A DNA stretch of 64,000 nucleotides from Heterodontus francisci (GCF_036365525.1 NC_090418.1:7232304-7296303), one strand, 5' to 3'; counted from the stretch's first letter, positions 3,766 through 63,893 are shown. The notes: a model not told the origin generated them from the letters alone. Made by a program: numbers and translations.

Positions 3766-4237
3766 TCATTAATCTAGTCCTCAGCCTGTGCTGCCGGGAG
3801 ATGGTGACAGGAGTTATGGCACTACGGGAATCTCGCAGGAAAAAACTGCCCGTCATTTACTCTGCTGATCTCCTGTAAGCAGGCATGTACTTGCCCCTTG
3901 TTTAAGTGTCGCCGTTTCCCCTGTAAATTGGGATAGTTTTGTGAAAGAGTGAGTGACATCAATTGCTTTTAACGTGTTGTTCCCTGCTTGCGCAACAGGA
4001 AGTTGTGCAGTAGTAGGGTAGAATGATCTGAAGATAACCTTTGTTCGATGTCTCAGTGTATAACGAATGTAACAGCAGCTCCGCACTGAGGGAAACAGGT
4101 AGCAGGGTTCAGTCAAGTGATGAGGATCAGGGCAGGCTGAGGAGAGGTGAAAGGCCCATCCCTCACTGAGACTGCACGCTCTCCTCAGACTGATCTTAGT
4201 CACTAAATCGAACCAGGCAAGTGGACTTTATATCTGA

Positions 4238-26430: not shown

Positions 26431-27609
26431 TGGAACTAGGTTAAGTCTTAAATGAAGAGCTAGCACTGATATCTTTCAGCACTGTACTTGCTATCATTCA
26501 GTGAGATACCAGCTGTGGCCTCCAACTCAACATCGCATCAGAAGGTGGGACCTTTGACAATGCAGCACGCCCTCGGTATGGCACTGGATGTTGGCCAACC
26601 TTACAGGGGGTGGTTTAATAACACCTGCCCACACCACCCAAAGCGACATTGAATCTCATGAACGCTGATGCTGAGCCCCCCTGCCATTGGTGAGGGAAGG
26701 TCTGTGCCCAGGATCACAATTAACTAAAAGCAGCCCTTATGTGCCCCAGTCCAGGAGTGCAATTTGATGCCACAACCGTCCGATCAGAGGTGGGAGCGTT
26801 ACAAGCAGTGCTACAAGAAGAGAGAAAGTTATGGAACCAAGGCAGGTAGGAGGACCTAAGATAGAGATTAGCCACAATCTAACTGAATGGTGGAACAGTC
26901 TTGAGCAGTTCTCCCCCTGTGCGGAGGAAGCAACAGCAGAGGGGGAGAGGTGGCAGGTGTTGATCACGCACTCTGGGGCCCTGACACAAACGCACCGAGA
27001 GGGCTCGTCTACATGTTACGCTTACGCAAGGCGGGAGCTGTCATGTGGGTTCACCACAGGAAAACCAGTGCCAAAGCATAGAGCAGGCATGGGGAATCTA
27101 ACCGTCACTCTTGGGCTCCTGGCTGACTGCTTTTGATGTGGTGATCTGATAGCAGAAAATCAAAGTAGGGTGTAACTCCATTCAGACAAAGCTGTGATCA
27201 CATCAATGAGCCATGTGATCATCCTCATGTTAAGAAGGTTGCATCACAGCATCAATCATCTGCACTTCCTCTCTTATACAGGCTCAGTCATGAGTCTGTA
27301 TATAGGAACAAGAGGAGGCCTTTCAGCCCCTCGAGCCTGTTCCGCCTTTCAATGAGATCATGGCTGACCGGTAACAACTCCATATACCCACCTTTGGCCC
27401 ATCTCCCTTAGTACATTTGGCTAACAAAAATCAATCTCAGATTTAAAATTAACAATTGATCCGGCATCAATTGCCATTTGTGGAAGAGAGTTCCAAACTT
27501 CTGCCACACTTTGTGTGTAGAAGTGTTTCCTAATTTCACTCCTGAAAGGTCTGGCTCTAATTTTTAGACTGTGCCCCCTCGTCCTAGACTCCCCAACCAG
27601 CGGGAGTAT

Positions 27610-29590: not shown

Positions 29591-32161
29591 AGAATGTTCA
29601 TTGCTGTGGCCATCGACATGAAGTATACCGACAAGTGCCTGTACACCATTAACGTCAACATTGGGTCCCGTATCTGCTGGGAAGGAGAGGAGGAGCGGAA
29701 GGAGTGGCACTGATACGTTGGCAGCCAGATTGGGCCACACTAAAGGTCCTTCTCGGCACCCAGCCATTGCTCACACACCCACCTCCGCAAAATAAGCTGT
29801 GGCAAAGACCCTTCTTGAACTGAGGGAGTGGTGCGCATGAGGACTCCAACCCTCAAGATCAGTTGTAGCAGCAAATCCAATGGCACAGATAGGGCGCTGG
29901 CCTTGCCAGCCTCTTCAGACACCACCCAGATCACATGCCATGCCATGCAAGATGCTATGGCATGGAGGCTAACTGGGTCAACATCACAATCCCAAAGCAC
30001 CAACACGGCTCAATATTTGGCCTTTGGAGAGATTAAACAAGCTAAATTTCACTGAAATGTGAAAGGTTAAATGGTGATTTGATCGAAGGTTTCAAGATAT
30101 TAAGGGGAACAGGTAGGGCAGCTTGGGAGAAACCATTTCCATTGATTGGGGAGTCTAGGACTGGGGGACACAGTCTAAAAATTAGAGCCAGACTTGTAAG
30201 GTTGAAATTAGGAAATAATTCTACACACAAAGGGTGATAGAAATTTTGAACTCTCTTCCACAAATGGCAATTGATGCTGGATCAATTGTTAATTTTAAAT
30301 CTGAGATTGATAGATTTTTGTTATCCAGAGGTATTAAGGGATATGGGGCTAAGGTGGGTATATGGAGTTAGGTCACAGATCAGCCATGATCTTATTCAAT
30401 GGCGGAACAGGCTCCAGGGGCTGAATGGCCTCCAGGTTCTTATGTCTCACTTGTCCTTTCCAAAATGTCAACTGTAGAGGTCAATGGGTCCATCCGGAAG
30501 GAAGTGGTGACACCCCTGGGCAGCCACTTGTGGATTTTCAGGGTGTTGCGAGGGGTGGGTGCGGTGGTTAGACATCGACGTCAAGCCGAAGAGTAGAATC
30601 AGAAAAAAAGCAATGAAAGAAAGACAGTGGAAGGCAGTTGACGTTAATTGCATATTAATAGTGTTTAATTGTGTGCAGGTGGTTGACATTCACTTGCGTC
30701 CCATAAACAGACACAGTCTGAAACTGTGATTGCTGGGTTAGGAGATGGACGCTTGTAATGTGTATCTCTGTAAATAAAATGCTTATAAAAGTGTGTAAAT
30801 ATTGGCTCCAGTTCCATCCTTCACCAGCTGTCTTTCTGGTGTGTAACAGCAGAAAACTAAGGTGGCCGACTCAGATACGAGGTGCACACAGCAGAAGCAA
30901 TGCCACGGGGAGACCCATCAGTGATTGTCAAGTTCTTTATTAAATCCGTAAAATGGAGGGCACTGGGTTCTAGCACACTCTTCACATCCCTAAGATCCAT
31001 AAAAGCATCAAGATACATTTGCACAAATTAGACCGTCCATCACTGATTAAAGCAATGGTTCCAAAATTGACGTTCCGGGGAGGGGCTCAAAAGAGTTGAA
31101 ACATGAGCCAGGAGGCAAGAGCAAATTGCAGTTTCCATATGTGCAGTGCAGGGTGGGCTGGCTTTTTCAGCCAGGGGAGCAACGCGTGAAGAATAGACAA
31201 ACTTTGCAATGAGTAAATACCCATGTTATCAAAAGCATCATAAAATCACTCTTTACATTGAGTACTTTTATACAATGAATATTACATAGAACAAACAAAA
31301 CAAAGAACAGTACAGCACAGGAACAGGCCATTCGGCCCTCCAAGCCTGCGCCGATCGTGATGCCTGCCGAAACTAACACCTTCTCCACTTCTGGGGCCCA
31401 TATCCCCTCTATTCCCTTTCTATTCATATATTTGTCAAGATGTCTCTTCAACGTCGCTATCGTATCTGCGATGAGGGTTCCGTGATTACTAACCCATTTC
31501 AGAAGCTCTCCAGCAAACAAAATCATTTGAGACTAACTGAATTAAAGGGTAAGCTCTTTGCAATTATAATTCTGGCCTTGGTCCTCCCTACTTTGCTGCT
31601 GAGATGGACTCCATCTCGCCCCACTCCATCCAAACCAGAGCAGCGTATCAACTTTTGGCCGGAATCTGCCCGATTATGGCTCTGGAATTTCTTTAAACAC
31701 AATCCATTGAGCTCATTATGAAAGTTAGATGAAGTGGGATCTTGGCTTTGAGAAAATTGTTGGGTAACCTTCGCACCCCCCTCCCAGCGCAATGCGAATG
31801 AGACCCATCTTCTCAAATCCACTTTCCCGCCCTATTCCTTGATTCTGCTAATGTCCAAAAATCTATTGGTCTCATACACTCATCGACGGAACATCCACAG
31901 CCCTCTGGGGCACAGAATGCAAAAGATTCACAGCCCATTGAGTGAAGACATTTTTCTTCACCTCAATCCTAAACAGCAGACCCCTTCATCCTGGTGACTA
32001 TGACCCCCATAGTTCTAGACTTTCCAACCAGGGGGAAACATCCTCTCAGCTTCTACCCTGTCAAGCCTGCCAAAGAATTTTATACGTTTCAATGCAGCTC
32101 CTGTCTCTCTTTGAGGAGTGAAGCTCTTGTGGGATCGAGCACAGGAAAAGAGGAGTGTGAC

Positions 32162-33962: not shown

Positions 33963-34465
33963 CTGGGGAAAGGGAACAGATAAACCCAGTCAGTATTGGA
34001 ATGGTTCCCCTACTCCTAACACTGTATAGCTGTCCCTCCATCTTACATAGCGAGTCATCATTCTATTAATCTACCCACCTCTATATCGTTCATTCTCTCT
34101 ATATCTGTCTCTCTCTTTCTGAGCAACTCTCTGTCTCACTTTACTCACTCTCTAGCTCCGTTAATACCTTAACACTGTTCGTCTGCCTCTCTCTCTCTTG
34201 CTGCCTCTCATAGTGCGTTTCTATCTATTCCTCTTGTTTTTCTCAAGCTGCCTCTCTCAATCCCTCTCTAATTCTCTTTAGCTCCATTTATCAATACTGC
34301 AGTACTTCGGTGAATAACTAATGAATGTCTTGCATCAGGTAATCTCCCCTTGAGAGCTTTGTTTAAAAATCTTTTTGTTGGATACTCGTGTTCGTGAAGG
34401 TGAGGGGTATTAGATCTGGAAAGCTGAACACAGTGGCACTTCAAGAGGTCAGTGACCTTATCAGG

Positions 34466-35711
34466 GGGCAGGTACAGCACGGGGTTAGAGACAGAATAAA
34501 GCTCCCTCTACACTGTCCCCATCAAACACTCCCAGGACAGGTACAGTACGGGGGTAAAAAAACCAAAAAAAAAACGGGGTTAGATACAGAGTAAAGCTCC
34601 CTCTACAAAAAAAAAAACGGGGTTAGATACAGAGTAAAGCTCCCTCTACACTGTCCCCATCAAACACTCCCAGGACAGGTACAGCACAGGTTAGATACAG
34701 AGTAAAGCTCCGTCTACACTGTCCCTATCAAACACTGAATGGAAAACACTTGTGGTAAACAAAGTCTTGTTGTGCAATTGTAGGAAGGAATGGAGTTGGT
34801 GTTAGATAAGTTTGAAACAAAAAAAAAAACGGGGTTAGATACAGAGTAAAGCTCCCACTACACTGTCCCCCATCAAACACTCCCAGGACAGGTACAGCAC
34901 AGGGTTAGATACGGAGTAAAGCTCCCTCTACACTGTCCCGTCAAACACTCCCAGGACAGGTACAGCACAGGTTAGATACAGAGTAAAGCTCCGTCTACAC
35001 TGTCCCTATCAAACACTGAATGGGAAAAACTTGTGGTAAACAAAGTCTTGTTATGCAATTGTAGGAAGGAATGGAGTCGGTGTTAGATAAGTTTGAAACA
35101 AAAAAAAACGGGGTTAGATACAGAGTAAAGCTCCCTCTACACTGTCCCATCAAACACTCCCAGGGCAAGTACAGCACGGGGTTAGATACAGAGTAAAGCT
35201 CCCTCTACACTGTCCCATCAAACACTCCCAGGGCAAGTACAGCACAGGGTTAGATACAGAGTAAAGCTCCCTCTACACTGTCCCATCAAACACTCCCAGG
35301 GCAAGTACAGCACGGGGTTAGATACAGAGTAAAGCTTCCTCTACACTGTCCCCATCAAACACTCACAGGACAGGTACAGCACGGAATTAAAAAAGAAAAA
35401 AAAACACCAAAAAAATTTTTAAAAGAAGAAAAAATGGGGTTAGATACAGAGTAAAGCTCCCTCTACACTGTCCCCATCAAACACTCCCAGGACAGGTACA
35501 GTACGGGGTTAGATACAGAGTAAAGCTCCCTCTACACTGTCCCCATCAAACACTCCCAGGACAGGTACAGCACGGGGTTAGATACAGAGTAAAGCTCCCT
35601 CTACACTGTCCCCATCAAACACTCCCAGGACAGGTACAGCACGGGGTTAGATACAGAGTAAAGCTCCGTCTACGCTGTCCCCATCAAACACTCCCAGGAC
35701 AGGTACAGCAC
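34466..35711. repeat. 69-bp minisatellite, left part, interrupted by five A-tailed inserts
   Basis: Unit CGGGGTTAGATACAGAGTAAAGCTCCCTCTACACTGTCCCCATCAAACACTCCCAGGACAGGTACAGCA, roughly 15 full or partial copies. Confidence 0.95.
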
Positions 35712-36395
35712 TGGGATTGGCTGGTCAATTTGGAGCACTTCCTGCCAGCAATCAGGGGGAGCAGCTGCACCTGTGTTGCAGCAATTGCAGAGTGGAGACT
35801 GGAGTAATTGGAGAAAGTGGAGAGGTGAATGCAGAGTGGAGAGAAACCATCAAGAAAGGCTGCAATTTTTCTGGAAAGGTGGGTGTCAGGGCACCTGAAA
35901 GACTCTGAAGTTTAAACTGTTTGGGGGAGGGAGAAGAGGCCTGAAGACTCAGGGGTGGGGCAGCCAAATCCAGTAGGGGCCCCTGTGTTTGTATTGGTGT
36001 TTGCACACAGGGAGCTCCCTCCCCACCCCAACTGCCTGCTCGGGACAGCTGGAGTTGCCCGGGTGAAGACTGTCTTGTTAAAATCAGAAGAGGAGAGTAC
36101 CGGGCGGCTCCAGCCGTCCCGGGCGAAGAAGCCTCCCCCAACTGGAAGACAACAAACAGTTTTGGACTAATTGTTATAAAGGTGCTCCAACTGGCAGTTG
36201 GATCAAACATCCTTTTCAGCCTTTCTCTCCCTTCCTCCACTCAGTCGCCTCAGTCACCTATCCTCCCCATTTCCTTTACCATCCTACCCCATCCTCCTCT
36301 ACTCCCACTCCACCTTGTTTAAAGTTTGCTTTTTTTTTTAAAAAATTGTGTAAATTTGTTTTGTTTCTTGGGGGTGGACGTAGCTCTTAGACCCC

Positions 36396-38435
36396 ATGGC
36401 AAGCCCCTCTTCGCCGGTGGCGGGGCCTTCCCGGTCATATGCTGCTGCGGCTGCTGCAGCTGCACCTGTTGCCCCGTCACCTTTTGCTTTATTAACAACG
36501 AAGCATGGGGTCAAGAGCTACGTCCACCCGAACATGACTATAGAGGCATGCGTGAAAGCAATGGCCGAGGTTGTCGGCCCCTCGGCCATTGTTGCAGCCT
36601 CTAAAATGTACGGGAAGGCAGTGTTTTTCCTGAAGACCGAGCGGGCGGTGTCCCTGGCTCTGAGCAAGGGGCTCACCGTGGGCGGGACCTTTCTGCCAGT
36701 GGACCCCCTGGAGGCCACTGCGCAAAGGCTCATTTTATCCAATGTCCCGCCCTTCATCCCTGGTGAGCTCCTCCTTCCCCACCTGCACCATCTGGGGGAG
36801 GTAAAGACGGGGCTCACCCCAGTCCCGCTCGGTCTTCGGGAGAACAGCCTCCGACACGTCTACTCCTTCCGCCGCCAGTTATTCATGCAGCTGGCGCGGG
36901 AGGAGGTGACAGAGGGCCACTTCAATGTAGAATTCCAGGGGACGGCCTACCGCGTCTTCTGGACCTTGGACGGGGTGCGGTGCCATGTCTGTAAGGGGGT
37001 GGGGCATGTTCGTAAGAACTGCCCCAACCTCGCGGCTGCCAACTCCAACTCAGCGGCCCAGGGTGGCGACGCTGCACCTCCTCCCACCCCCACTACACCA
37101 CCACCAGATACCATTCAGTCGGTACCGGAGGCTGTGGTTTTCACGGCCTCCGGCAGGGAGGGGGGTGACCGTCCAAGTGGAAGGAAGGCGCGGAGGAGAA
37201 ATAAACATCGAGAGGCGCGTCCCCTGGATATCGTGACACTACCCGAGCCTGAGCTCAGCCCAAGGCCCGATCTCGGGAAGTCAACTTGCCCCAGGGCTGG
37301 GCTCAGGCCCAGGGTGAATAAAAAAAAGGAGAGTGTGGAGGTGGAGGCCTCTGATGATATGGAGGTCTCTGAGCCTCCGCACACAACTGGGAAAAAGAGG
37401 AGAAGGCACCCCTCCACAGAGGTAACAAGGGGCCCTGAGGCGCAGGGCCCATCTGTTGGAGGGGAGCTGTCTCCTGTTTCGGGTCCCCAGGTTTCCCCTA
37501 CCGCCACCACCAAGGCTGCAAAGTCCGGGCAGGTGCTCCCAATTCCTCAGGATGGAGGGAAGGGGATGGCCCCGGTACATGAGGCCCCTACTGAAGGAGT
37601 AAGTGGGGCCCTGCTTGTGGTGGGGGAGCCTGGGGAAGCCGCCCATTCTGCCACTGCTACTGGGTCGGGTGTCCTGAATGAAGGGGAGGGCGAGGCCCCA
37701 GAGGGTCGGGCCTCCCAGCCGGAGTCCACCACCAACCAGGAGACACCCGACCCAGTTATAACTGAGAATGCTGCCCCACCTGCTGGGCCTGTGGGTGCTG
37801 GCGGAGCGGGAGATAGCCTCCTCCCTCCGCCTCCAATCTCGGCTCCGGCTGGTTTCCCGGAGTCGGGAACTTCTGTCTCCCCTGGACCACTCATTGCCCT
37901 GGGGACGGAGGTGGAGGGGGGTCCTGAGCCGCTGGTGCCTACAGGCTCCAGTTTCACAATAGAACCCAGAGAGGACTCCTCCGCCATCGATCCTGGGGGT
38001 GGGATCGTGACGGAGGCGGGACCAGCTGGCGCGGCCGGGACGTCCGCCCCACAGTGTGTGGTGGATGTGTTGGCCGCTGGCGGTGACGACCCGGAGGAGG
38101 ATGGGGATTCGGTGCGGGGCACGGAGGATGATCTTGATTCCATCGCCAGTGAGGTGGTGGAGTCCCTCGTGCCTCCCACCGAATCTCCTCTCATCCCCAC
38201 GGCGGAACTCCGGGATTTCCTCGCGGCTTGCAGGGGTTGCCGCAATAAAGTTCAGCTGGCCCTCGACCGTTGGTCGAATCTGGCGCTGATCATCCAGTCC
38301 GTCCGTGCCGCCCTTAAGATAGCGGGCAAGCGCGCGGACGTGAAACTGGTTGAGAGGCGCCGTTTTAATGTGTTCCTCAATGGGTTGCTGGGGGAGTGGA
38401 GGGCCAGGTGCACTTCCACTCCCTCCTCACAGTGA
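36396..38435 (+). CDS. Tx1 ORF1 protein (RNA-binding, zinc knuckle), 679 aa
   Basis: Tx1-type N-terminus (IVAASKMYGKAVFFL, LILSNVPPFI, HVYSFRRQ), CCHC knuckle CHVCKGVGHVRKNC, long Pro/Gly/Glu-rich linker. Confidence 0.92.
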   Translation: MASPSSPVAGPSRSYAAAAAAAAPVAPSPFALLTTKHGVKSYVHPNMTIEACVKAMAEVVGPSAIVAASKMYGKAVFFLKTERAVSLALSKGLTVGGTFLPVDPLEATAQRLILSNVPPFIPGELLLPHLHHLGEVKTGLTPVPLGLRENSLRHVYSFRRQLFMQLAREEVTEGHFNVEFQGTAYRVFWTLDGVRCHVCKGVGHVRKNCPNLAAANSNSAAQGGDAAPPPTPTTPPPDTIQSVPEAVVFTASGREGGDRPSGRKARRRNKHREARPLDIVTLPEPELSPRPDLGKSTCPRAGLRPRVNKKKESVEVEASDDMEVSEPPHTTGKKRRRHPSTEVTRGPEAQGPSVGGELSPVSGPQVSPTATTKAAKSGQVLPIPQDGGKGMAPVHEAPTEGVSGALLVVGEPGEAAHSATATGSGVLNEGEGEAPEGRASQPESTTNQETPDPVITENAAPPAGPVGAGGAGDSLLPPPPISAPAGFPESGTSVSPGPLIALGTEVEGGPEPLVPTGSSFTIEPREDSSAIDPGGGIVTEAGPAGAAGTSAPQCVVDVLAAGGDDPEEDGDSVRGTEDDLDSIASEVVESLVPPTESPLIPTAELRDFLAACRGCRNKVQLALDRWSNLALIIQSVRAALKIAGKRADVKLVERRRFNVFLNGLLGEWRARCTSTPSSQ

Positions 38436-38467
38436 GCTGTTGGTGACGGGTTTTAAGTACCTTTGAC

Positions 38468-41400
38468 ATGAAGATAACCATAGCCAGCCTCAACATCAAC
38501 GGCAGCAGAGGGGCTCACCGCAGATTTCACAATCTCTCAGTCCTTAGGGAAGGGAGATACGCGGTGAGCTTTCTGCAGGAAACCCACACCGTTCCGGGAG
38601 ACGAAGCCACCTGGCTCCTGGAGTGGCAGGGTGGGGTCTACATGAGTCACCTCACCCCTATTTCTAGTGGGGTGGCTATCTTGTTGGCCCCGACTTTTCA
38701 GCCGGAGATCTTGGGGGTCAAGGAGCTAGTGCCGGGCCGCTTGCTCCACCTCGCCGTTCGCCTGGGTAGCGTGCCGCTCCACTTTGTGAATGTGTACGCG
38801 CCCAGGCCCGGCGCTTTGCAAGCGCGCTTCTTTGAAGAAGTGTCCGCTCTCTTGAGCTCCATCGATAGCGGCGAGTGCATCATCCTCGGGGGGGATTTTA
38901 ACTGCACCCTGGAGGTGGGGGATCGCTCCGGTCCCCAGCGCGGCCAAGCGTCGGTGGAGAAGTTGAGGGGACTGATCAGCTCCCTTAACTTGGTGGACGT
39001 CTGGCGGAATCTCCATCCCGACTCCAGCGCCTTCACGTGGAGGTCTGGAGGAGGGGGGTCGCGAATCGACCGCCTCTACATTTCGCAGGCGTACGTCTCC
39101 CGCGTTTCGGCGGCCTCCATGCGGCTGGTGCCGTGCTCGGACCACCGCCTGGTGTGGGCGGAGTTCACTCCGCTCCGCACGCGGGCGGGGTCCGCGTACT
39201 GGCACTTTAACAACCGGCTGCTGGAGGACGTGCGATTTCGGGACTCGTTCTGTCGATTCTGGGCCGACTGGAGAAGGAAGCAGGGGGGCTTCCCCTCCTT
39301 GAGGCTATGGTGGGATGTGGGCAAGACTCACATCCGCGTCTTCTGTCAGGAGTACGCGAAGGGGTCGACCAAAAGGCGGGAAGCCGAGATCGGGCGCCTT
39401 GAGAGGGAGGTGCTCGACTTGGAATCCCGCCTCGGTCATGCCGTCGCGGACCCGGCCCTGTGGCAGGCGTACAAAGAGAAGAAGGGCGCGCTGAGGAACC
39501 TGCAGCTCATAGGGTCCCGAGGCGCGTACGTGAGGTCGCGGATTCAGATCCTGCAAGATTTGGACCGCGCCTCACCCTTCTTCTACTCGCTGGAAAAATG
39601 GCGGGGGGTCCGTAAGCAGCTCGTCGAGCTGCTGGCCGACGACGGATCCTCCATCACGGATCCGGAGGGAATGGGCCTCCTGGTCCGGACGTATTACAGT
39701 GCGTTGTTCTCTCCGGATCCGTCCAGCGAGGATGCGCGCAGAGTTTTGTGGGAGGACCTGCCGCAGGTCAGCCCGGAGGGCGCCGAAGGATTGGAGGCTC
39801 CGCTCACGTTGGCGGAGCTGACTGGCGCCCTCCACCAGCTCTCGAGGGGCAAATCCCCAGGGCTGGATGGGTTGACCGTGGAGTTCCTCAGGGCGTTCTG
39901 GGACGTCCTGGGGGACGATTACGCGCGGGTCCTGGGGGAAAGCCTGGCGACCGGGGAGATGCCCCTCTCGTGGCGCAGGGCGGTCATCGTCCTGCTGCCG
40001 AAGAGGGGCGATCTTCGCCTGCTTAAAAACTGGCGTCCGGTCTCCCTCCTCAGCACGGATTATAAGATCTTTGCCCGGGCTATGTCTACCCGCCTGGGCT
40101 CCGTGCTGGCCCACATGATCCACCCCGACCAGTCCTACACGGTCCCGGGCCGGTCCATCCAGGACAACATCCACCTGGTCCGGGACCTGATCCATCTTTC
40201 CCAGAGGACTGGTCAGTCGGTCGCCTTTCTCTCCCTCGATCAGGAGAAGGCGTTCGACAGGGTGGATCACGATTACCTTTTCGGGACTCTGCGCGCTTTC
40301 GGACTCGGGCCGCATTTCGTGGCCCGGGTCCGACTTTTATACGCCGCCGCAGAGTGTCTAGTCAAAGTTAACGGGTCCTTGACGGCGCCCCTTCGATTTG
40401 GGAGAGGAGTGCGTCAGGGGTGCCCCATGTCCGGCCAATTGTATACCATCTGCGTGGAGCCCTTCCTGTGCCTGCTTCGCAGGAGCTTGACGGGATTGGC
40501 TCTGCGCGAGCCGGCCATGCGGGTCGTCCTCTCGGCTTACGCCGACGACGTGCTCCTCGCAATCACAGATCCCGTTGACTTGCGGAGGATGCGCGACTGC
40601 CAGCAGACCTTTTCTGCCGCGTCCTCCGCGAGGATCAATTGGGAGAAATGTTCCGGACTCCTGGTTGGTCAGTGGCGGGTGGACTCCCTGCCGGAGGAGA
40701 TGACACCTTTTGCGTGGAGCACCACGCACCTCCTCTATCTGGGAGTCCACCTTAGCCCCGCTGAGGAAGCCTGGCCGGCAAACTGGCAGGAGTTGGAGGC
40801 GAAAGTCACCGCTCGGCTGGGGCGCTGGACAGGACTGCTCCGAGTGCTTTCCTACAGGGGCCGAGCGTTGGTCATAAACCAACTGGTGGCCTCCATGCTG
40901 TGGTACCGGTTGGTCACTTTGGCCCCGCCCCCTGTATTTGCCACCAAGATCCAGAAGAAACTCGTCGATTTCTTCTGGGGCAAGAGGAAACACTGGGTCT
41001 CTGCCGCGGTCCTGAGTCTCCCGATCGAGGAGGGCGGTCAGTCGCTGGTGTGCGTCCGCACCCAGGCTGCGACTCTCCGCCTTCGGACCCTGCAGAGATA
41101 CCTGTACGTCGAGCGTCCTCCCAGATGGTGTGCGCTGGCGACGTATTTTTTCCGCCAGTGTCACTGCCTTCAAGACGACACGCAGCTCCCGGTGGAGTCC
41201 GTTAGCCGCGCCTCTCTGAGGGAGTTGCCTGTCTTTTACCGGGATCTTTTCCGAGTCTGGAACATGGTCGCCTCCAGTCAGGGCGCTCCCCCGCCGGCGG
41301 AGGAGAGCGCCTCGGCTGTCCGGGCGGCCGACTCCGGGGACGGTCCGGCGGGCGGAGGAGTAGCCGAAACCCCCGGGACGCCCCTCACTGCGGGTGGCGA

Positions 41401-42205
41401 GGGGGCTCGGGAGTGCGGAGCGATCCCGGCCGAGCTGACCCCCGCTCGGCCGGAACTGCTCATCGGACCCAGGCCCCGAAACCCTCCTCGGGAGCCGGTC
41501 CCGCACAACCCGAGCCGCCTCTCGGAAATGCCCTCCGTGCCATTCCAATCGGCGCGGAGGGGTTTCCTGTACGGGCTGCTCCTGCACACTCTCCACTTCC
41601 TCGCCCTCGTCAGCCGGCCGGACACGCCCTGGCGGTCCGCGTTGCCATCTGGCGGCGAGGGGAAACCCCGATGGAGGTCTCTCTACGCGGGAGTCTTCCC
41701 CCTTTACATCGGGGACCTGGGGTGGAGGGTGCTGCACAGAGCAGTCCCGTGCAATAGGCTTTTAAGTAGGTTCACGGACTCCCAGGCCACCTGTACTTTC
41801 TGCGGCCTGGACGAGTCCGTGTTCCACATTTATACGGAGTGTGCGAGGTTGCAGCCCCTATTTGAGTATCTGAAGGGGCTGCTCCTCAAATTCTGGCTGC
41901 GCTTCAGTCCCACGCTCCTGATCTTTGGGCACCCGGTGCGGAGGGGCTCGGGCCGGGAGGAGGATCTCCTCGTCGGTCTGCTCCTGGGCCTGGCCAAGGT
42001 GGCAATTCACAGGTCCAGGTTGCGGGCCGTCGGGGGGTCCGTCCTCCCCGATTGCCTGCCCCTCTTCCGCGGTTACGTTCGCGCCCGGGTGTCCCTGGAA
42101 AAGGAGCATGCGGTGTCCGCCGGTACGCTTGAGGCCTTCCGCGACCGGTGGGCACCGCAGGGACTGGAGTGCATCGTCGACGCCGAGAATGGCATTTTAA
42201 TTTGA
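38468..42205 (+). CDS. Tx1 ORF2 protein: APE endonuclease, reverse transcriptase and C-terminal zinc finger, 1245 aa
   Basis: EN motifs SLNING, LQETH, GGDFN, SRIDR, SDH; RT motifs KSPGLDG, NWRPVSLL, LDQEKAFDRV, GVRQGCPMS, YADD, YLG; C-terminal CTFCGLDESVFHIYTEC; no stops or frameshifts. Confidence 0.96.
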   Translation: MKITIASLNINGSRGAHRRFHNLSVLREGRYAVSFLQETHTVPGDEATWLLEWQGGVYMSHLTPISSGVAILLAPTFQPEILGVKELVPGRLLHLAVRLGSVPLHFVNVYAPRPGALQARFFEEVSALLSSIDSGECIILGGDFNCTLEVGDRSGPQRGQASVEKLRGLISSLNLVDVWRNLHPDSSAFTWRSGGGGSRIDRLYISQAYVSRVSAASMRLVPCSDHRLVWAEFTPLRTRAGSAYWHFNNRLLEDVRFRDSFCRFWADWRRKQGGFPSLRLWWDVGKTHIRVFCQEYAKGSTKRREAEIGRLEREVLDLESRLGHAVADPALWQAYKEKKGALRNLQLIGSRGAYVRSRIQILQDLDRASPFFYSLEKWRGVRKQLVELLADDGSSITDPEGMGLLVRTYYSALFSPDPSSEDARRVLWEDLPQVSPEGAEGLEAPLTLAELTGALHQLSRGKSPGLDGLTVEFLRAFWDVLGDDYARVLGESLATGEMPLSWRRAVIVLLPKRGDLRLLKNWRPVSLLSTDYKIFARAMSTRLGSVLAHMIHPDQSYTVPGRSIQDNIHLVRDLIHLSQRTGQSVAFLSLDQEKAFDRVDHDYLFGTLRAFGLGPHFVARVRLLYAAAECLVKVNGSLTAPLRFGRGVRQGCPMSGQLYTICVEPFLCLLRRSLTGLALREPAMRVVLSAYADDVLLAITDPVDLRRMRDCQQTFSAASSARINWEKCSGLLVGQWRVDSLPEEMTPFAWSTTHLLYLGVHLSPAEEAWPANWQELEAKVTARLGRWTGLLRVLSYRGRALVINQLVASMLWYRLVTLAPPPVFATKIQKKLVDFFWGKRKHWVSAAVLSLPIEEGGQSLVCVRTQAATLRLRTLQRYLYVERPPRWCALATYFFRQCHCLQDDTQLPVESVSRASLRELPVFYRDLFRVWNMVASSQGAPPPAEESASAVRAADSGDGPAGGGVAETPGTPLTAGGEGARECGAIPAELTPARPELLIGPRPRNPPREPVPHNPSRLSEMPSVPFQSARRGFLYGLLLHTLHFLALVSRPDTPWRSALPSGGEGKPRWRSLYAGVFPLYIGDLGWRVLHRAVPCNRLLSRFTDSQATCTFCGLDESVFHIYTECARLQPLFEYLKGLLLKFWLRFSPTLLIFGHPVRRGSGREEDLLVGLLLGLAKVAIHRSRLRAVGGSVLPDCLPLFRGYVRARVSLEKEHAVSAGTLEAFRDRWAPQGLECIVDAENGILI

Positions 42206-42357
42206 GTTTTTTTGTTTATTTATCTGTTTTAATAAAGTTATTTTAAAACTGTAAATATGTACATAAAGGGGGCCTGAGGGATAAAGGCCCCCTCGACGTG
42301 AAAAATATAAAAGGGGCCTGGGGTATAAAGGTCACCTTGTAAAAAAAAAAAAAAAAA

Positions 42358-42851
42358 CGGGGGTTAGCTACAGAGTAAAGCTCCCTCTACACTAAAAAAA
42401 AAACAAAAAAAAAAAAAAAAAAAAAAAAAAAACGGGGTTAGATACAGAGTAAAGCTCCCTCTACACTGTCCCCATCAAACACTCCCAGGACAGGTACAGC
42501 ACGGGGTTAGATACAGAGTAAAGCTCCGTCTACGCTGTCCCCATCAAACACTCCCAGGACAGGTACAGCACGGGGTTAGATACAGAGTAAAGCTCCGTCT
42601 ACGCTGTCCCCATCAAACACTCCCAGGACAGGTACAGCACGGGGTTAGATACAGAGTAAAGCTCCCTCTACACTGTCCCCCATCAAAAAAAAAACGGGGG
42701 TTAGATACAGAGTAAAGCTCCGTCTACACTGTCCCCATCAAACACTCCCAGGACAGGTACAGCACGGGGTTAGATACAGAGTAAAGCTCCCTCTACACTG
42801 TCCCCCATCAAAAAAAAAACAGGGGTTAGATACAGAGTAAAACTCCCTCTA
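42358..42851. repeat. 69-bp minisatellite, right part, interrupted by three poly(A) tracts
   Basis: Same unit resumes at CGGGGGTTAG immediately after the Tx1 poly(A) tail. Confidence 0.95.
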
Positions 42852-43018
42852 GTTTTGCAGCTTCAGTGGGAGCTGCCAATTTCCTTTTGCAAATGCAGTG
42901 TCAGCGTGCGAACGACAGGCTCAGACTCATCGCCAGGGCAAAGCCGTGACCTTCGAACTGTCCGAGCACCGGTCACTACTGCAGGAAGGGTAGCTGGGGG
43001 AGAGCAGCTGTGCCTTAC

Positions 43019-43082: not shown

Positions 43083-44232
43083 CTGTTGAAGCACTGCCAC
43101 CCGACCTGGAGACAGAAAAGGAGATACCTTTGTCAGTGCAGTCTGAATCACAATTGGATTATTAAAAGCCACAGAGTTCAGTGGCAAACTATCACGTACC
43201 AGATCTCAGGAAACAATTGCAATTGCTCAGTTAGCAGTTATGAAGTGTTTTGAAAGCAAGAACGAGAAGCGGCAATGTAAATAAAATTACATTTTAAAAT
43301 GGGTGCAGGTCTTGTCACTACACAAATCTCTGAAGTTGGCAGGACAGGCTTCATAGGTGGACATGGAATACAAAAGCAAGGAAGCCAAGATCGACCTTTA
43401 TAAATCACGGATTAAGGCCCAGTTCTGGGCACCACACCTTCAGAAAGATAGATTGGCCTTGGAGGGAGCACAGTGTCGATGTACCATGATACCTGGACTC
43501 CAAGGGTTAAATTATGAGGAGCAATTACACAAACTCGGGTCTTCCTAGAATTTAGAAGGTTAAGGGGTGATTTGATCAAAGCTTTCGAGATGTTAGTGGG
43601 AACAGATAAGGTTGACAGAGAGAACCTATTTCTGCTGGTTGCGGAGTCTACGACGAGGGGGCACAGTCTAGAAATTAAAGCCAAGCCTTTCAGGAGAGAA
43701 ATTGGGAAACACTTCTACACACAAAGGGTGGTAGAAGTTTGGAACTCTCTTCTGCAAATGGCAGTTGATGCTGGATTAATTGTTAATTTTAAATCTGAGA
43801 TTGATAGATTTTTGTTAATTAAAGGTATGAATGGATATGGGGCAAAGGTGGGGTATCTGGAGCTCAGTCACTGATCAACTATGATCTAATTGAATGGAGC
43901 AACAGGCTCGAGGGGCTGAATGACCTCCTCCTTTACCTATGCTCCTGCATTTCAGAATTACCTAATTGACAGTGAAGCGTTTTGGGACATCCTACGGTGC
44001 TATAGAAATGCAAATGCTTTCTTTTCTCAATCAAGCCACCCCATGCTTTGCTCGACCCAGCAATCTCCAGCCTCAGACATAGCTATGGACATCTGAATGA
44101 GGGAGGATTCTCCAGGCTAACCTCACATGGAAGGTTGATGCAACAGGGAGGTTTGGCCCCAGATTTAACCAGTCTGGGGGCAATCACAGATCTGAATCAA
44201 CAGAAGACAAACACACTGACGAAAATACTCAC

Positions 44233-44654: not shown

Positions 44655-45645
44655 GGATGTGGAAAGAGAGCAGGGCAGTGGGATTAGTTTGGGATTGTTA
44701 CAGGGCTATGGGGAGAGAGTGGGACAGTGGGACTAGTATGGGATTGATACAGGGCTATGGGGAGAGTGCGGGGCAGTTGGATTAGTTTGGGATTGATACA
44801 GGGCTATGGGGAGAGAGCAGAGCAGTGGGATTAGTTTGAGATTGATACAGGGCCATGGGGAGAGAGAGCAGGGCAGTGGGATTTGTTTGGGATTGATACA
44901 GGACTATGGGGATAGTGCGGGGCAGTGGGATTAGCTTGGGATTGATACAGGGCTATGGGGTGAGAGCGGGGCAGAGGGATTAGTTTGGGATTGATACAGG
45001 GCTATGGGGAGAGAGCGGGGCAGTGGGATTAGCTTGGGATTGATACAGGGCTATGGGGTGAGAGCGGGGCAGAGGGATTAGTTTGGGATTGATACAGGGC
45101 TATGGGGAGAGAGTGGGGCAGTGGGATTAGTTTGGGATTGATACAGGGCTATGGGGAGAGAGTGGGGCAGTGGGATTAGTTTGGGATTCATACAGGGCTA
45201 TGGGGAGAGAGTGGGGCAGTGGGATTAGTTTGGGGATTGATACAGGGCTATGGGGAGAGAGCGGGGCAGTGGGATTAGTTTGGGATTGATACAGGGCTAT
45301 GGGGTGAGAGCGGGGCAGAGGGATTAGTTTGGGATTGATACAGGGCTATGGGGAGAGAGTGGGGCAGTGGGATTAGTTTGGGATTGATACAGGGCTATGG
45401 GGAGAGAGTGGGGCAGTGGGATTAGTTTGGGATTCATACAGGGCTATGGGGAGAGAGTGGGGCAGTGGGATAAATTTGGGAATGATACAGGGCTATGGGG
45501 AGAGAGCGGGGCAGAGGGATTAGTTTGGGATTGTTACAGGGCTATGGGGAGAGAGTGGGGCAGTGGGATAAATTTGGGATTGATACAGGGCTATGGGGAG
45601 AGAGCGGGGCAGAGGGATTAGTTTGGGATTGATACAGGGCTGTGG
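44655..45645. repeat. 49-bp G-rich minisatellite, short array
   Basis: Unit GGGCTATGGGGAGAGAGTGGGGCAGTGGGATTAGTTTGGGATTGATACA, about 20 copies. Confidence 0.95.
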
Positions 45646-51379: not shown

Positions 51380-52475
51380 CAGTGGAACTGTACACCAGTG
51401 AGGGTCAGTGCGTGTGGAACTGTACCCCAGTGAGAGTCAGTGTGTGTGTGGAACTGTACCCCAGTGAGAGTCAGTGCGTGTGGAACTGTACACCAGTGAG
51501 AGTCAGTGCGTGTGGAACTGTACCCCAGTGAGAGTCAGTGCGTGTGGAACTGTACCCCAGTGAGAGTCAGTGTGTGTGTGGAACTGTACCCCAGTGAGAG
51601 TCAGTGTGTGTGGAACTGTACCCCAGTGAGAGTCAGTGTGTGTGTGGAACTGTACCCCAGTGAGAGTCAGTGCGTGTGGAACTGTACCCCAGTGAGAGTC
51701 AGTGTGTGTGTGGAACTGTACCCCAGTGAGAGTCAGTGTGTGTGGAACTGTACCCCAGTGAGAGTCAGTGTGTGTGTGGAACTGTACCCCAGTGAGAGTC
51801 AGTGTGTGTGGAACTGTACCCCAGTGAGAGTCAGTGTGTGTGTGGAACTGTACCCCAGTGAGAGTCAGTGTGTGTGGAACTGTACCCCAGTGAGAGTCAG
51901 TGTGTGTGTGGAACTGCACCCCAGTGAGAGTCAGTGTGTGTGGTACTGTAACCCCAGTGAGAGTCAGTGTGTGTGGAACTGTACCCCAGTGAGAGTCAGT
52001 GCGTGTGGAACTGTACCCCAATGAGAGTCAGTGTGTGTGGAAATGTACCCCAGTGAGAGTCAGTGTGTGTGTGGAACTGTACCCCAGTGAGAGTCAGTGT
52101 GTGTGGAACTGTACCCCAGTGAGAGTCAGTGTGTGTGTGGAACTGTACCCCAGTGAGAGTCAGTGTGTGTGTGGAACTGTACCCCAGTGAGAGTCAGTGT
52201 GTGTGGAACTGTACCCCAGTGAGAGTCAGTGTGTGTGGAACTGTACCCCAGTGAGAGTCAGTGCGTGTGGAACTGTACCCCAGTGAGAGTCAGTGTGTGT
52301 GGAACTGTACCCCAGTGAGAGTCAGTGCGTGTGGAACTGTACCCCAGTGAGAGTCAGTGCCTGTGGAACTGTACCCCAGTAAGAGTCAGTGCGTGTGGAA
52401 CTGTACCCCAGTGAGAGTCAGTGCGTGTGGAACTGTACCCCAGTGAGAGTTAGTGCGTGTGGAAATGTACCCCAG
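51380..52475. repeat. 32/34-bp minisatellite
   Basis: Unit GTGGAACTGTACCCCAGTGAGAGTCAGTG(C/T)GT with a variable (GT)n spacer. Confidence 0.95.
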
Positions 52476-52854
52476 TTGTTTTGCACCCATGTATATCCAG
52501 CTTCACTCTCAGACTCATATCTCCCTGCCTTCTGACGCACAGGGGTATAAAGGAGCATGGAAGTACGCAGATGTATGGAGTTAGGTTAAAGATCAGCAAT
52601 GATCTGACTGAGTGGCGTAACGGGCTCGAAGGGCTGAATGGCCTACTCCTGTCCCAATGCTGATTCATCTGCCTCTTTGAGAGATGTGGGTCATCCAGGA
52701 CTATATCTGTTTTAATTCCACACACCACATCCTGTTGATTTGATGTGGTGCACAGTACAATGCACATGACATCAGCTCAATCCATGAGCTGAACCATTTG
52801 CTCACTGTTACTGAAACTCATCAGGAGGAAGTCTGAATTAAAAAGAAAACAAAC

Positions 52855-55389: not shown

Positions 55390-55546
55390 NNNNNNNNNNN
55401 NNNNNNNNNNNNNNNNNNNNNNNNNNNNNNNNNNNNNNNNNNNNNNNNNNNNNNNNNNNNNNNNNNNNNNNNNNNNNNNNNNNNNNNNNNNNNNNNNNNN
55501 NNNNNNNNNNNNNNNNNNNNNNNNNNNNNNNNNNNNNNNNNNNNNN
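55390..55546. other. Assembly gap (157 N)
   Basis: Run of n characters. Confidence 1.
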
Positions 55547-56535
55547 TTCACACACACAGACAGAGACAGACAGAAACAGAAAGCGCGCAACAGAAAAGAG
55601 AGACAGACAGTGAGAGACAGGGTGCCAAATAGAGAGAGAAAGAGACACAGGAGGCACAAAGAGCGAGAGAGAGAACCTAGAGACAGACAGTGAGGGACAG
55701 AAAGGGAGACACAGAGAGAGATAGACAGAGAGAGACAGGGAGAGACAGACAGTAGGAGACAGAGAGTGCTGTCTCACTTTCTCTCTCTACCTCTGTCTCT
55801 CTCTCTCTCACTATCTTTACCTCTGTCTCTCCCTGCTTCTGTCTTATGCTGGTTCTTTTTCTGTCTGTTTATCTTTGTATCTCTTTCTCACTGTCTCGCT
55901 CTCTCTCTCAGTCTTTGTTTCTCTGTTTCTCTCTCTCTCTGCCTCTCTGCATCTCTTTCTGTCTCTCTGTGTCTCTGTCACTCTGTCCGTCTTTCTCTAT
56001 GTCTCCGTCTGTCTCTGTCTCTCTCTCTCTGCCTCTCTGTGTCTCTGTCTCTCTATCGCTGTGTCTCTTTCTCACTGTTTCTCTCCATCTCTTTCTCTCT
56101 GTCTCTCTCTCTCAGTTTTGGATCTGTGTGTGTGTGTCTCTGTTTGTCTCTCTCTGTGTCTGTGTCTCTCTATCTTTCTGTCTCTTTCTCACTCTCTCTC
56201 TCCATCTCTTTCTCTCTGTCTCTCTCTCTCAGTTTTGGATCTGTGTGTGTGTGTCTCTGTTTGTCTCTCTCTGTCTGTGTCTCTCTATCTTTCTGTCTCT
56301 TTCTCACTCTCTCTCTCCATCTCTTTCTCTCTGTCTCTCTCTCACTTTTGGATCTCTCTGTGTGCGTCTCTGTTTGTCTCTCTCTCTGTCTCTGTTTCTC
56401 CCACAGTCTTTGTTTCTCTGTCCGTCTCTCTCGCTTCCTCTGTTTCTCTCTGTCTCTCTCATACCATCTCTCTCTTTCTGTCTGTCTGTCTATCTTTGTG
56501 TTTCTTTCTCACTGTCTCTCACTCGCTCTCTGTGC
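55547..56535. repeat. Low-complexity (AG)-rich then (CT)-rich degenerate microsatellite
   Basis: Purine-rich to about 55765, pyrimidine-rich after; internal duplications of about 110 bp at 56080-56380. Confidence 0.9.
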
Positions 56536-62900: not shown

Positions 62901-63666
62901 GCGGGGCAGTGGGATTAGTTTGGGATTGATAGTGGGGAGAGAGTGGAGCAGTGGGATTAGTTTGGGATTGATACAGGACTATGGGGAGAGAGCGGGGGAA
63001 TGGGATTAGTTTGGGATTGATACAGGGCTATGGGGAGAGAGTGGGGGAGTGGGATTAGTTTGGGATTGCTACAGGGCTATGGGGGAGAGAGTGGGGGAGT
63101 GGGATTAGTTTGGGATTGCTACAGGGCTATGGGGGAGAGAGTGGGGGAGTGGGATTAGTTTGGGGATTGATACAGGGCTGTGGGGAGAGAGTGGGGCAAT
63201 GGAATTAGTTTGGGATTGATACAGGGCTGTGGGGAGAGAGTGGGGCAATGGAATTAGTTTGGGATTGATACAGGGCTATGGGGAGAGAGCGGGGGAATGG
63301 GATTAGTTTGGGATTGATACAGGGCTATGGGGAGAGAGCGGGGGAATGGGATTAGTTTGGGATTGATGCAGGGCTATGGGGAGAGAGCGGGGGAATGGGA
63401 TTAGTTTGGGATTGATGCAGGGCGGTGGGGAGAGAGCGGGGGAATGGGATTAGTTTGGGATTGATACAGGGCTGTGGGGAGAGTGTGGGGCAATGGAATT
63501 AGTTTGGGATTGATACAGGCCTATGGGGAAAGAGTGGGGGACTGGGATTAGTTTGGGATTGATACAGGACTATGGGGAGAGTGTTGCGCAGTGTGATTAG
63601 TTTGGGATTGATGCAGGCCTGTGGGGACAGAGTGGGGGAGTGGGATTAGTTTAGGATTGATACAGG
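56975..63666. repeat. 49-bp G-rich minisatellite, 6.7-kb array
   Basis: Same unit as 44655-45645, well over 100 copies, with variant blocks. Confidence 0.96.
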
Positions 63667-63893
63667 GCCCCTAACAGCTCTGGTGATTTCCTGTTCTGTT
63701 GAGCATTTGATAACTATTTGGACAGGAGAGTACCGGGATTCTTTGTTTCCTGAGCTATTGACGTTGGGTTTAGTGTGATGTGTGTTGTATCTATCAGCCA
63801 GGCTCCAGCTCATGGCCCTCATTTCCCTCTTCCCTTTACTTTTACGAGGTTCTCTGTCATTTCGTAACCAAAGAAGTGTTTACAAGAACTTAC

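What the first reader, a model, noticed from the sequence alone, without database searches (positions are those of the whole stretch)
34466..42851. Sequence-specific Tx1 retrotransposon targeting a 69-bp minisatellite, with the array logging repeated insertions
Seen: an intact 6.6-kb Tx1 element is inserted at ...GGTACAGCAC^GGGGTTAG... of the 69-bp unit. Eight other A-tailed interruptions (34556-34574, 34607-34617, 34737-34829, 35018-35108, 35385-35434, 42394-42432, 42685-42694, 42810-42819) end at the same register, immediately 5' of (C)GGGGTTAGATAC. Their 5' junctions vary, from a few to about 50 nt further into the unit. Established: target-primed reverse transcription gives a fixed poly(A)/3' junction at the first nick and a variable 5' junction. 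Tx1-clade elements are often target-specific (U2 snRNA, 5S rDNA, tRNA arrays, TC/TTC microsatellites, Tx1D/Tx2D). Inference: this family's APE endonuclease recognises a complex minisatellite, a target I do not know to be described. The array would then be a renewable landing pad that preserves a record of at least 6-7 independent events (two pairs look like later duplications). An intact site-specific element could also be of interest for targeted integration.
Basis: partly seen in the sequence, partly recalled or inferred. Interest (0 to 1): 0.92.

Follow-up and report, generated by a model that had tools for sequence, protein, structure and literature searches.

The report
Shark Tx1 retrotransposon targeting a minisatellite
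An intact jumping gene of the frog-Tx1 group, plus several other poly(A)-tailed RNA copies, all entered one 69-bp tandem repeat at the same nucleotide and in the same direction; this is the known site-specific habit of the Tx1 group, here with a target I could not find described.

Summary
A 69-bp tandem array (34469-35711 and 42358-42851) is split by a 6,646-bp non-LTR element with two open reading frames. Eight further A-rich interruptions lie in the array.

Every interruption ends with an A-run followed by C(69)-GGGG(1-4) of the unit. All have the same orientation. Their 5' junctions vary (unit phase 0 to 50). I count 5 to 7 independent events. Four other minisatellites in the window (about 10 kb) have no such interruption.

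ORF2 (APE endonuclease plus reverse transcriptase) is 50% identical over its full length to Xenopus Tx1L and groups with it in a tree.

**Best reading:** a target-specific Tx1-clade LINE whose endonuclease nicks the bottom strand at the CpG unit boundary. The same machinery also carries other poly(A) RNAs to that site.

**Not tested:** specificity across the genome. A few contig joints fit the rule.

The scan has seen the same thing before: about ten unchecked notes from other pieces of this shark genome, one of them followed up.

Tx1 elements that target repeats, satellites included, are already known (Kojima 2015). This is therefore a new member of a known kind, not a new principle.

The parts
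34469..35711 (+). Left part of the 69-bp minisatellite array (about 15 units with 68-70-bp variants), carrying five short A-tailed interruptions
34556..34574 (+). Interruption E1: A7-CC-A10. The upstream flank runs to unit phase 5, giving a 6-bp duplication CGGGG(G)T
34575..34607 (+). 33-nt partial unit (phase 69 to 32) held between two A-runs. It is identical to the start of the next unit
   Evidence: (43-bp period, 100% match)
34608..34617 (+). Interruption E2: A10 after unit phase 32, followed by C-GGGG
34737..34829 (+). Interruption E3: 93-nt A-tailed 3' end of an RNA unrelated to this Tx1. The 5' junction is at phase 50. The flanking partial units differ at 5 or more sites, so this is an 18-bp target deletion, not a duplication
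35018..35108 (+). Duplicate of E3 (95.6% identical) inside a ~281-bp repeated block of the array
35385..35434 (+). Interruption E4: 50-nt degenerate A-rich tract. The 5' junction is at phase 2. It is followed by T-GGGG (CpG decay of C69)
35712..42357 (+). Full-length Tx1-clade non-LTR retrotransposon, 6,646 bp: 5' UTR 35712-36395, 3' UTR 42206-42340, A17 tail 42341-42357. The upstream flank ends exactly at unit phase 69
36396..38435 (+). ORF1, 679 aa, open. It has one CCHC zinc knuckle (CHVCKGVGHVRKNC) and no Pfam match
38468..42205 (+). ORF2, 1,245 aa, open. APE endonuclease at aa 6-226 (nt 38483-39145), reverse transcriptase at aa 511-762 (nt 39998-40753) with YADD, and a C-terminal Cys/His motif shared with Tx1L
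42358..42393 (+). 36-nt partial unit (phase 69 to 34) between the element's A17 and the next A-run. It differs from the next local unit by one extra G and one A-to-C change
42394..42432 (+). Interruption E6: A10-C-A28, followed by C-GGGG
42433..42851 (+). Right part of the 69-bp array, ending at unit phase 30
42685..42694 (+). Interruption E7: A-run after unit phase 46, followed by C-G-GGGG
42810..42819 (+). Duplicate of E7 within a 125-bp repeat, followed by C-A-GGGG

Best explanation
This is an intact, probably recently active member of a high-copy Tx1-clade LINE family of a shark. The family integrates sequence-specifically into a dispersed 69-bp minisatellite.

**Inferred mechanism**
1. 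The APE-type endonuclease of ORF2 nicks the bottom strand of the unit. The nick lies opposite the A68/C69 step (bottom strand 5'-CTAACCCCG^T-3'), at the CpG that joins two units.
2. The freed 3'-OH primes reverse transcription on the poly(A) tail. Every insertion therefore ends as A(n)-C-GGGGTTAG.
3. Second-strand cleavage and 5' joining are imprecise. They give duplications of 1-6 bp or losses of tens of bp, and frequent 5' truncation down to the bare tail.
4. The machinery recognises poly(A), so it also carries other polyadenylated RNAs to the same site.
5. Neighbouring units stay intact, so the array remains a target.

**Shown:** the anatomy, the clade membership, and the shared phase and orientation of 5 to 7 events in this array.

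**Inferred:** that the endonuclease is what determines the site, and that the rule holds across the genome.
For: **The element**
- 6,646 bp with two open ORFs. EN and RT domains are intact, with catalytic motifs aligned to Tx1L and human L1-EN.
- ORF2 is 50% identical over 100% of its length to Xenopus Tx1L. It groups with Tx1L, sturgeon and turtle elements (SH-aLRT 100).

**The insertion into the array**
- The unit is continuous across the element: phase 69 on the left, C69-GGGG on the right. It therefore entered a pre-existing array.

**The other interruptions**
- All eight share the 3' junction and the strand. Their contents differ: bare tails, a 93-nt foreign RNA end, a 50-nt A-rich tract. 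Their 5' phases differ too.
- They are enriched about 20-fold over the window background. Four other arrays have none.

**Contig joints from the same organism**
- A variant element with a short 3' UTR, joined as A5-C-AGGGTTAG.
- A 5'-truncated copy starting at 42050, joined after unit phase 1.
- Units cut at phase 29/30 and at phase 38, each followed by an A-run and then C-(A)GGGG.

**Family size and age**
- More than 40,000 contigs of the source organism lie on the stretch. About 10,000 of them are at least 99% alike.

**Established knowledge**
- Tx1L-EN nicks almost only at its expected target site in vitro (PMC1950540).
- Many Tx1 families prefer a particular target (PMC4494074).
Against: **Limits of the evidence**
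- Read laying dropped 42333-42442 as a repeat. Copies with unrelated flanks would not have been seen.
- One contig joint (42293 to 42646, with TTAATAAA between) does not fit the canonical phase.

**Weak points in the mechanism**
- The beta-hairpin loop linked to target choice in L1-EN and Tx1L-EN is short and glycine-rich here (WRSGGGG against VRVRDGHVSQ in Tx1L). It gives no clue to a long recognition site.
- Some events in the array are not independent. Two are duplicate pairs, and two A-tract pairs may be single events.
Confidence: 0.8

Rival explanations
1. Homing by RNA-target pairing rather than by endonuclease specificity. Transcripts of resident copies read through the element's weak TATAAA signal into the downstream unit. 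They are polyadenylated after that unit's AGTAAA hexamer (phase 15-20), at about phase 32-34. The carried 33-36 nt of target sequence then pairs with the nicked target and fixes the junction. When priming instead starts on the terminal tail, the carried piece is inserted too, which gives the 'A-run, partial unit, A-run' sandwiches.
For: - Two sandwiches have the same build: 34556-34617 and 42341-42432.
- The partial units end 12-14 nt after AGTAAA.
- The piece behind the full-length copy differs from the local unit at 2 of 36 positions, although the element and its A39 tract look young. That suggests a foreign donor locus.
- Nine contigs of the source organism show a unit cut at phase 32 and followed by poly(A) (loose end at 42672).
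- Read-through pairing is an established aid to precise insertion for R1 and R2 (discussed in PMC4494074).
Against: - Foreign RNAs that cannot carry target sequence (the 93-nt insert) still land at the same nucleotide.
- The 5' phases seen in all are 0, 2, 5, 29/30, 32, 34, 38, 46 and 50. They are spread out, not clustered at one cleavage site.
- The first sandwich piece is identical to the next unit, including equal A10 runs. A plain tandem duplication or a target-site duplication would also explain it.
- Sequential insertions that sandwich a duplication are documented for Tx1-Mar and SINEU-3 (PMC4494074).
Confidence: 0.1
2. One or two insertions spread within the array by unequal crossing-over or gene conversion. 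On this view the shared junction reflects common descent, not repeated targeting.
For: - Two interruption pairs are clearly duplicates.
- The array has higher-order periods of 125 bp and about 281 bp.
- A 43-bp block is repeated exactly.
Against: - After the duplicates are removed, the interruptions differ in content (6.6-kb element, 93-nt foreign RNA, A-rich 50-mer, bare tails). They also differ in 5' break point (phases 0, 2, 5, 32, 34, 46, 50).
- Contig joints from elsewhere in the genome show further forms.
- Unchecked notes from about ten other windows describe the same junction.
Confidence: 0.05
3. Endonuclease-independent capture of cDNAs at a recurrent break or structure-prone point of the repeat (the G-run/CpG boundary).
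For: - The site is a CpG next to a G4 run.
- Endonuclease-independent LINE insertion at existing lesions is known for L1 (own knowledge).
Against: - The orientation is strictly single and the 3' junction is exact to the nucleotide in every event.
- An intact endonuclease is encoded, with its catalytic residues conserved.
- The closest characterised relative has a demonstrably site-specific endonuclease (PMC1950540).
Confidence: 0.03

Closest known systems
Tx1L / Tx1D of Xenopus laevis (founder of the Tx1 clade)
   Same: - Same subgroup in the ORF2 tree, with 50% identity end to end.
- Two ORFs, an APE-type EN, a poly(A) tail.
- Insertion at one defined position of a multicopy repeated sequence.
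- The Tx1L endonuclease is site-specific in vitro (PMC1950540).
   Different: - The Tx1L target lies in Tx1D, a non-autonomous piggyBac-type DNA transposon (PMC4494074). From my own knowledge, it lies within the ~400-bp internal tandem repeats of Tx1D.
- Here the target is a free-standing 69-bp minisatellite. I found no terminal inverted repeats within 2 kb.
- The target sequences are unrelated.
- The EN hairpin loop is 4 residues shorter and differs in sequence.
Tx1-Mar with SINEU-3 in crocodilians (Kojima 2015, PMC4494074)
   Same: - A Tx1 family with a preferred position in an abundant interspersed repeat.
- Other RNAs mobilised in trans share the target.
- Tandem insertions are separated by a short piece of target.
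   Different: - The target there is a Mariner DNA transposon, with a regular 16-bp duplication.
- That group clusters with Keno, not with Tx1L.
- Here the duplications and deletions are irregular.
Kibi, Koshi and related Tx1 families of microsatellites; Tx1 families marked 'Sat' in Fig. 3 of PMC4494074
   Same: Tx1-clade elements that use tandem repeats as a renewable target.
   Different: - Kibi and Koshi use 2-4-bp units, where phase is almost meaningless. Here one nucleotide of a complex 69-bp unit is used.
- I could not see which families carry the 'Sat' label or what their satellites are. The figure and supplement are not held.
R1, R2, TRAS and SART (site-specific LINEs of rDNA and telomeric repeats)
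   Same: A fixed first nick in a tandemly repeated host sequence, with the possible use of read-through target RNA for precise junctions.
   Different: They belong to other clades (R1; the RLE-bearing R2). Their targets are functional host repeats, not an anonymous minisatellite.
L1 3' transduction and L1-mediated processed pseudogenes
   Same: - Read-through into the downstream flank with a second poly(A) tail is a possible reading of the two sandwiches.
- Poly(A) RNAs are mobilised in trans.
   Different: L1 has only a loose TTTT/A site. Here the trans-mobilised copies inherit a single-nucleotide target.

Membership tests
Tx1 clade of non-LTR retrotransposons | ORF2 with an N-terminal APE-type endonuclease followed by a reverse transcriptase | tested here: met
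   - Pfam Exo_endo_phos at aa 6-226 (E 1.5e-16) and RVT_1 at aa 511-762 (E 7e-38).
- The EN aligns over its whole length with human L1-EN structures (E 3e-20).
Tx1 clade of non-LTR retrotransposons | ORF2 groups phylogenetically with Tx1L rather than with other L1-like lineages | tested here: met
   - 50% identity over 1,301 aligned columns to YTX2_XENLA.
- Forms a clade with Tx1L, Acipenser and Caretta elements (SH-aLRT 100) in a quick tree of 24 rows.
- Caveats: no named Keno, Mutsu, Dewa, Kibi or Koshi sequences were available, and the tree has no L1 outgroup.
Tx1 clade of non-LTR retrotransposons | Upstream ORF1 with a nucleic-acid-binding zinc knuckle; poly(A) 3' end | tested here: inconclusive
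   - One CCHC motif was seen by eye in the 679-aa ORF1, but there is no Pfam hit.
- ORF1 was not compared with Tx1 ORF1.
- An A17 tail is present.
Target-specific LINE (criterion of PMC4494074: one kind of sequence in more than 20% of the flanks of a family) | Most or many genomic copies are flanked by the same sequence at the same position | not testable with these tools
   **What was tried**
- Scans of three public collections found no copy of the unit.
- Read laying skipped the junction.

**Partial evidence**
- 5 to 7 events in this array.
- Four fitting contig joints and one that does not fit.
- Unchecked notes from other windows.
Target-specific LINE | Fixed 3' junction and single orientation relative to the target | tested here: met
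   All nine junctions in the array read A-run / C69 (T once) / GGGG, and all are on the + strand.
Known small-RNA-gene targets of Tx1 (U2, U5, 5S, tRNA) | The target unit is, or derives from, such a gene | tested here: not met
   - Rfam found no family in 34300-36400 apart from two sub-threshold miRNA matches inside the element's 5' UTR.
- No tRNA was found in the window.
3' transduction | Downstream flank of a donor copy carried between the element's tail and a second tail, with a poly(A) signal inside it | tested here: inconclusive
   - The structure is present twice. AGTAAA lies 12-14 nt before the second tail.
- One carried piece differs from the local unit and the other does not.
- A donor locus cannot be sought with these tools.

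The most novel reading that the evidence does not exclude
The repeat may be more than a passive landing pad.
- Each unit would supply the polyadenylation signal (AGTAAA) for the element inserted upstream of it.
- The read-through tag of 33-36 nt would help the RNA find the next unit.
- Polyadenylated transcripts of the array itself (units cut at phases 30-46 plus a tail) would be copied back into arrays by the Tx1 machinery.

On this reading the LINE partly builds and spreads its own target minisatellite.
Probability: 0.2. Interest if true: 0.65.

Novelty: new member of a known kind. Interest (0 to 1): 0.42.

Why it matters
- It adds a cartilaginous-fish family, with a complex 69-bp unit as its target, to the catalogue of site-specific APE-type LINEs.
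- The copy here has both reading frames open. The family has many near-identical fragments. The endonuclease and its target could therefore be tested directly with an oligonucleotide duplex.
- APE-type endonucleases with long recognition sites are few. How they read sequence is poorly understood, and the short glycine-rich hairpin loop here suggests that other surfaces do the reading.
- For genome annotation: A-tailed fragments inside this very abundant shark repeat are insertion scars of one system, and processed gene copies may collect there.
- It does not change the known picture of Tx1 biology.

Tried and rejected
**Routes to other copies that failed**
I tried the window's ORF2 and the 93%-identical Heterodontus francisci fragment.
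- Exact-pattern scans for the unit core found nothing in the metagenome, prokaryote-genome or viral collections.
- I tried to sample 5' junctions through predicted proteins, because the array's frame 1 is open and runs 31 codons into the element. No candidate was found.
- A HMMER search of 1.84 billion representatives with four translated units gave 11 weak hits. Only two carry recognisable units, and none carries a junction.
- Read laying treated 42333-42442 as a repeat and dropped rows there. No table of flanks could be made. It covered only the 3' part of the element, so the 5' junction was not sampled.

**Ideas tested and dropped**
- The array is the inside of a DNA transposon, as with Tx1D. 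I found no inverted repeat between 2-kb flanks, and the immediate flanks are unique in the window. This is inconclusive beyond 2 kb.
- The unit derives from an snRNA, tRNA or 5S gene. Not supported.
- The 93-nt insert is a truncated copy of this Tx1. Rejected: it has no similarity to the element.
- The long 5' offsets are target-site duplications. Rejected for the 93-nt insert, where the flanks differ at 5 or more of 51 sites. Left undecided for the others.

**Literature**
- Full-text searches for the unit sequence returned nothing.
- Searches for Tx1 in sharks returned nothing relevant.
- Repbase and Dfam cannot be consulted here.
- The original Tx1 papers (PMC362770, PMC85248) are not held.


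Full report
**What is there**

Between 34469 and 42851 lies a tandem array of a 69-bp unit. I number the unit from phase 1 (first G of GGGGTTAGATAC) to phase 69 (last C of GGTACAGCAC). A 25-nt core of the unit occurs 23 times with up to 3 mismatches, always on the + strand. It occurs nowhere else in the 64-kb window, and shuffles give 0.

The array is split by a 6,646-bp insert (35712-42357) that is unique in the window. The insert has these parts:
- a 684-nt leader
- ORF1, 679 aa (36396-38435)
- ORF2, 1,245 aa (38468-42205)
- a 135-nt 3' UTR
- an A17 tail

**What the element is**

ORF2 carries an APE-type endonuclease (aa 6-226) and a reverse transcriptase (aa 511-762).
- It aligns end to end with the Xenopus laevis Tx1L ORF2 at 50% identity. 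The alignment includes the QETH, GDFN and SDH endonuclease motifs, YADD, and a C-terminal Cys/His motif.
- The EN domain matches human L1-EN structures over its whole length.
- In a quick maximum-likelihood tree of 24 ORF2 proteins it falls in a fully supported clade with Tx1L, a sturgeon element and sea-turtle elements. Teleost elements of 35-41% identity fall outside.
- The nearest database proteins are fragments from Heterodontus francisci (93%) and Hemitrygon akajei (74%). The host is therefore a cartilaginous fish.
- ORF1 has one CCHC knuckle and no Pfam match.

Membership of the Tx1 clade is met on the features I could test.

**The junctions**

The unit is continuous across the element. 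The left flank ends at phase 69. After the tail come C69, one extra G, and GGGGTTAG. The element therefore entered an existing array, with a duplication of at most 1-2 bp.

Each ends with an A-run followed by C69 and then GGGG. Once the C is a T, and once an A sits in the extra-base position between C69 and GGGG. Both are the changes expected from decay of the C69-G1 CpG.

Their left edges differ:

| Unit phase of 5' junction | Interruption |
|---|---|
| 5 | 34556-34574 |
| 32 | 34608-34617 |
| 50 | 34737-34829 and its copy 35018-35108 |
| 2 | 35385-35434 |
| 34 | 42394-42432 |
| 46 | 42685-42694 and its copy 42810-42819 |

Their contents differ too:
- bare tails
- a degenerate A-rich 50-mer
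- a 93-nt A-tailed end of an RNA with no similarity to this element

**Is it more than chance?**

- A- or T-runs of 8 or more occur at 0.25 per kb outside the array and 5.2 per kb inside it (Poisson P = 1e-9).
- All nine runs in the array are A-runs on the + strand.
- Four other minisatellites in the same window have none. These have units of 33, 49 and 32/66 bp and total about 10 kb. Tandem repeats as such are therefore not the attraction.
- With the two evident duplicate pairs removed, seven events remain. If the two 'A-run, partial unit, A-run' pairs are single events, five remain.
- Five events sharing one of 69 phases and one strand has P of about 3e-9.

**Duplication or deletion at the 5' side**

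In a tandem array, a flank that runs on to phase x can mean a duplication of x+1 bp or a loss of 68-x bp.
- For the 93-nt insert, the partial unit before it and the unit after it differ at 5 or more of 51 positions. This is a deletion of 18 bp.
- For 34575-34607, the two copies are identical.
- For 42358-42393, they differ at 2 of 36 positions.
- For the phase-46 event, they differ at 2 of 47.

A fixed 3' junction with irregular 5' joining, often at A-containing positions, is the signature of target-primed reverse transcription.

**Evidence from outside the window**

I could not fetch other copies:
- Three collection scans for the unit found nothing.
- Two protein-based attempts to sample junctions failed.

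Contigs of four public runs were laid on 37000-42950.

*Copy number and spread across species*
- The element is very high-copy in the source organism: 40,408 contigs laid, 10,087 of them at least 99% alike.
- It is also abundant in a second organism.
- It is present at low depth but up to 99.8% identity in a third.
- The 69-mer is far more abundant still in the first two.

*Junction forms*

The tool skipped 42333-42442 as a repeat, so no unbiased flank table exists. Among the few joints printed, four are new forms that fit the rule:
- a variant with a short 3' UTR joined as A5-C-AGGGTTAG
- a 5'-truncated copy beginning at 42050, joined after phase 1
- a unit cut at phase 29/30, followed by an A-run and C-(A)GGGG
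- a unit cut at phase 38, followed by an A-run and C-(A)GGGG

One joint (42293 to 42646) does not fit.

*Possible RNA runs*

Four of the listed runs are labelled 'RNA?', which is the tool's guess. I laid one of them (X5). It covers all of the element, so expression is possible but not shown.

*Earlier notes of this scan*

About ten notes from other pieces of the same genome describe Tx1 copies and tailed inserts at one nucleotide of a 67-72-bp repeat. One mentions retrocopies of host mRNAs. One follow-up report reached the same reading. These are unchecked leads, not support.

**Mechanism**

I take the endonuclease to nick the bottom strand opposite A68/C69, and the poly(A) tail to be copied from that primer. 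Reasons:
- The closest characterised relative, Tx1L, has an endonuclease that nicks almost only at its expected target site in vitro (PMC1950540).
- Foreign poly(A) RNAs land at the same nucleotide. This argues for the protein choosing the site, not the RNA.

The hairpin loop that influences target choice in L1-EN and Tx1L-EN is short and glycine-rich here. Which surface reads the target is open.

**An unresolved detail**

Twice, an insertion's A-run is followed by a 33-36-nt partial unit and a second A-run (34556-34617; 42341-42432).

One reading is that two insertions followed each other, the first having duplicated the site. This is described for SINEU-3 and Tx1-Mar (PMC4494074).

The other reading is a single RNA that read through the element's weak TATAAA signal and was polyadenylated 12-14 nt after the unit's AGTAAA.
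- In favour: the piece behind the full-length copy differs from the local unit, and nine contigs show a unit cut at phase 32 followed by poly(A).
- Against: the wide spread of 5' phases, and the exact 43-bp repeat at the first sandwich.

I leave it open.

**Comparison and novelty**

Target-specific insertion is the hallmark of the Tx1 clade. Known targets (PMC4494074) are:
- Tx1D
- U2, U5, 5S and tRNA genes
- (TC)n, (TTC)n, (TTCC)n and (TTTC)n microsatellites
- Mariner and Harbinger transposons and LTR elements
- 'Sat' (satellites), listed in the legend of that paper's Fig. 3

The 69-mer is not a recognisable RNA gene. I found no terminal inverted repeats around the array. Its sequence is absent from the searchable literature. 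Repbase and Dfam could not be checked.

I therefore file it as a new member of a known kind. It is a clean and probably active example with an unusually informative array, and it does not establish a new principle.

Noticed in passing
window 2026-3234; 44665-45645; 51382-52476; 56976-63668: Four other minisatellite arrays: 33-bp x37, 49-bp x20, 32/66-bp x34, and 49-bp x137 (the two 49-bp arrays are the same family). None has poly(A)-type interruptions. The window is unusually rich in tandem repeats.
   Followed up: partly
window 42206-42340: The element's 3' UTR holds two similar hairpins (GGGGGCC...GGCCCCC stems with 9-nt loops). The fold z-score is -2.65. It may be a recognition structure for the reverse transcriptase.
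   Followed up: partly
window 43421-43946 and 3345-3770, 11426-11827, 20119-20622, 27302-27601, 30063-30433: A dispersed repeat of about 400-530 bp, 78-84% identical between copies, on both strands. It is probably a SINE or another transposon and is unrelated to the finding.
   Followed up: no
window 35436-35711 (frame 1) and protein P0125: One reading frame of the 69-bp unit has no stop codon (23 aa per unit). A 454-aa cytokine-receptor-like database protein contains one unit-like stretch (80% identity over 30 aa). Units can therefore end up in annotated exons.
   Followed up: partly
window 37866-42174, run X11 (organism C): A different coded organism holds contigs of this element at up to 99.8% identity (1,541 bp with 3 differences) but at low depth. 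It is either a very close relative, a recent transfer, or cross-contamination.
   Followed up: no
window 55390-55546 and 55552-56531: An assembly gap (157 N) lies directly beside a ~1-kb CT-rich low-complexity tract.
   Followed up: no
window 34687, 34901, 34968, 35246, 35435, 42821: The unit boundary C69-G1 is a CpG. Several units read CA or TG there, as expected from methyl-CpG decay. The target site itself may therefore be methylated in the germ line.
   Followed up: partly
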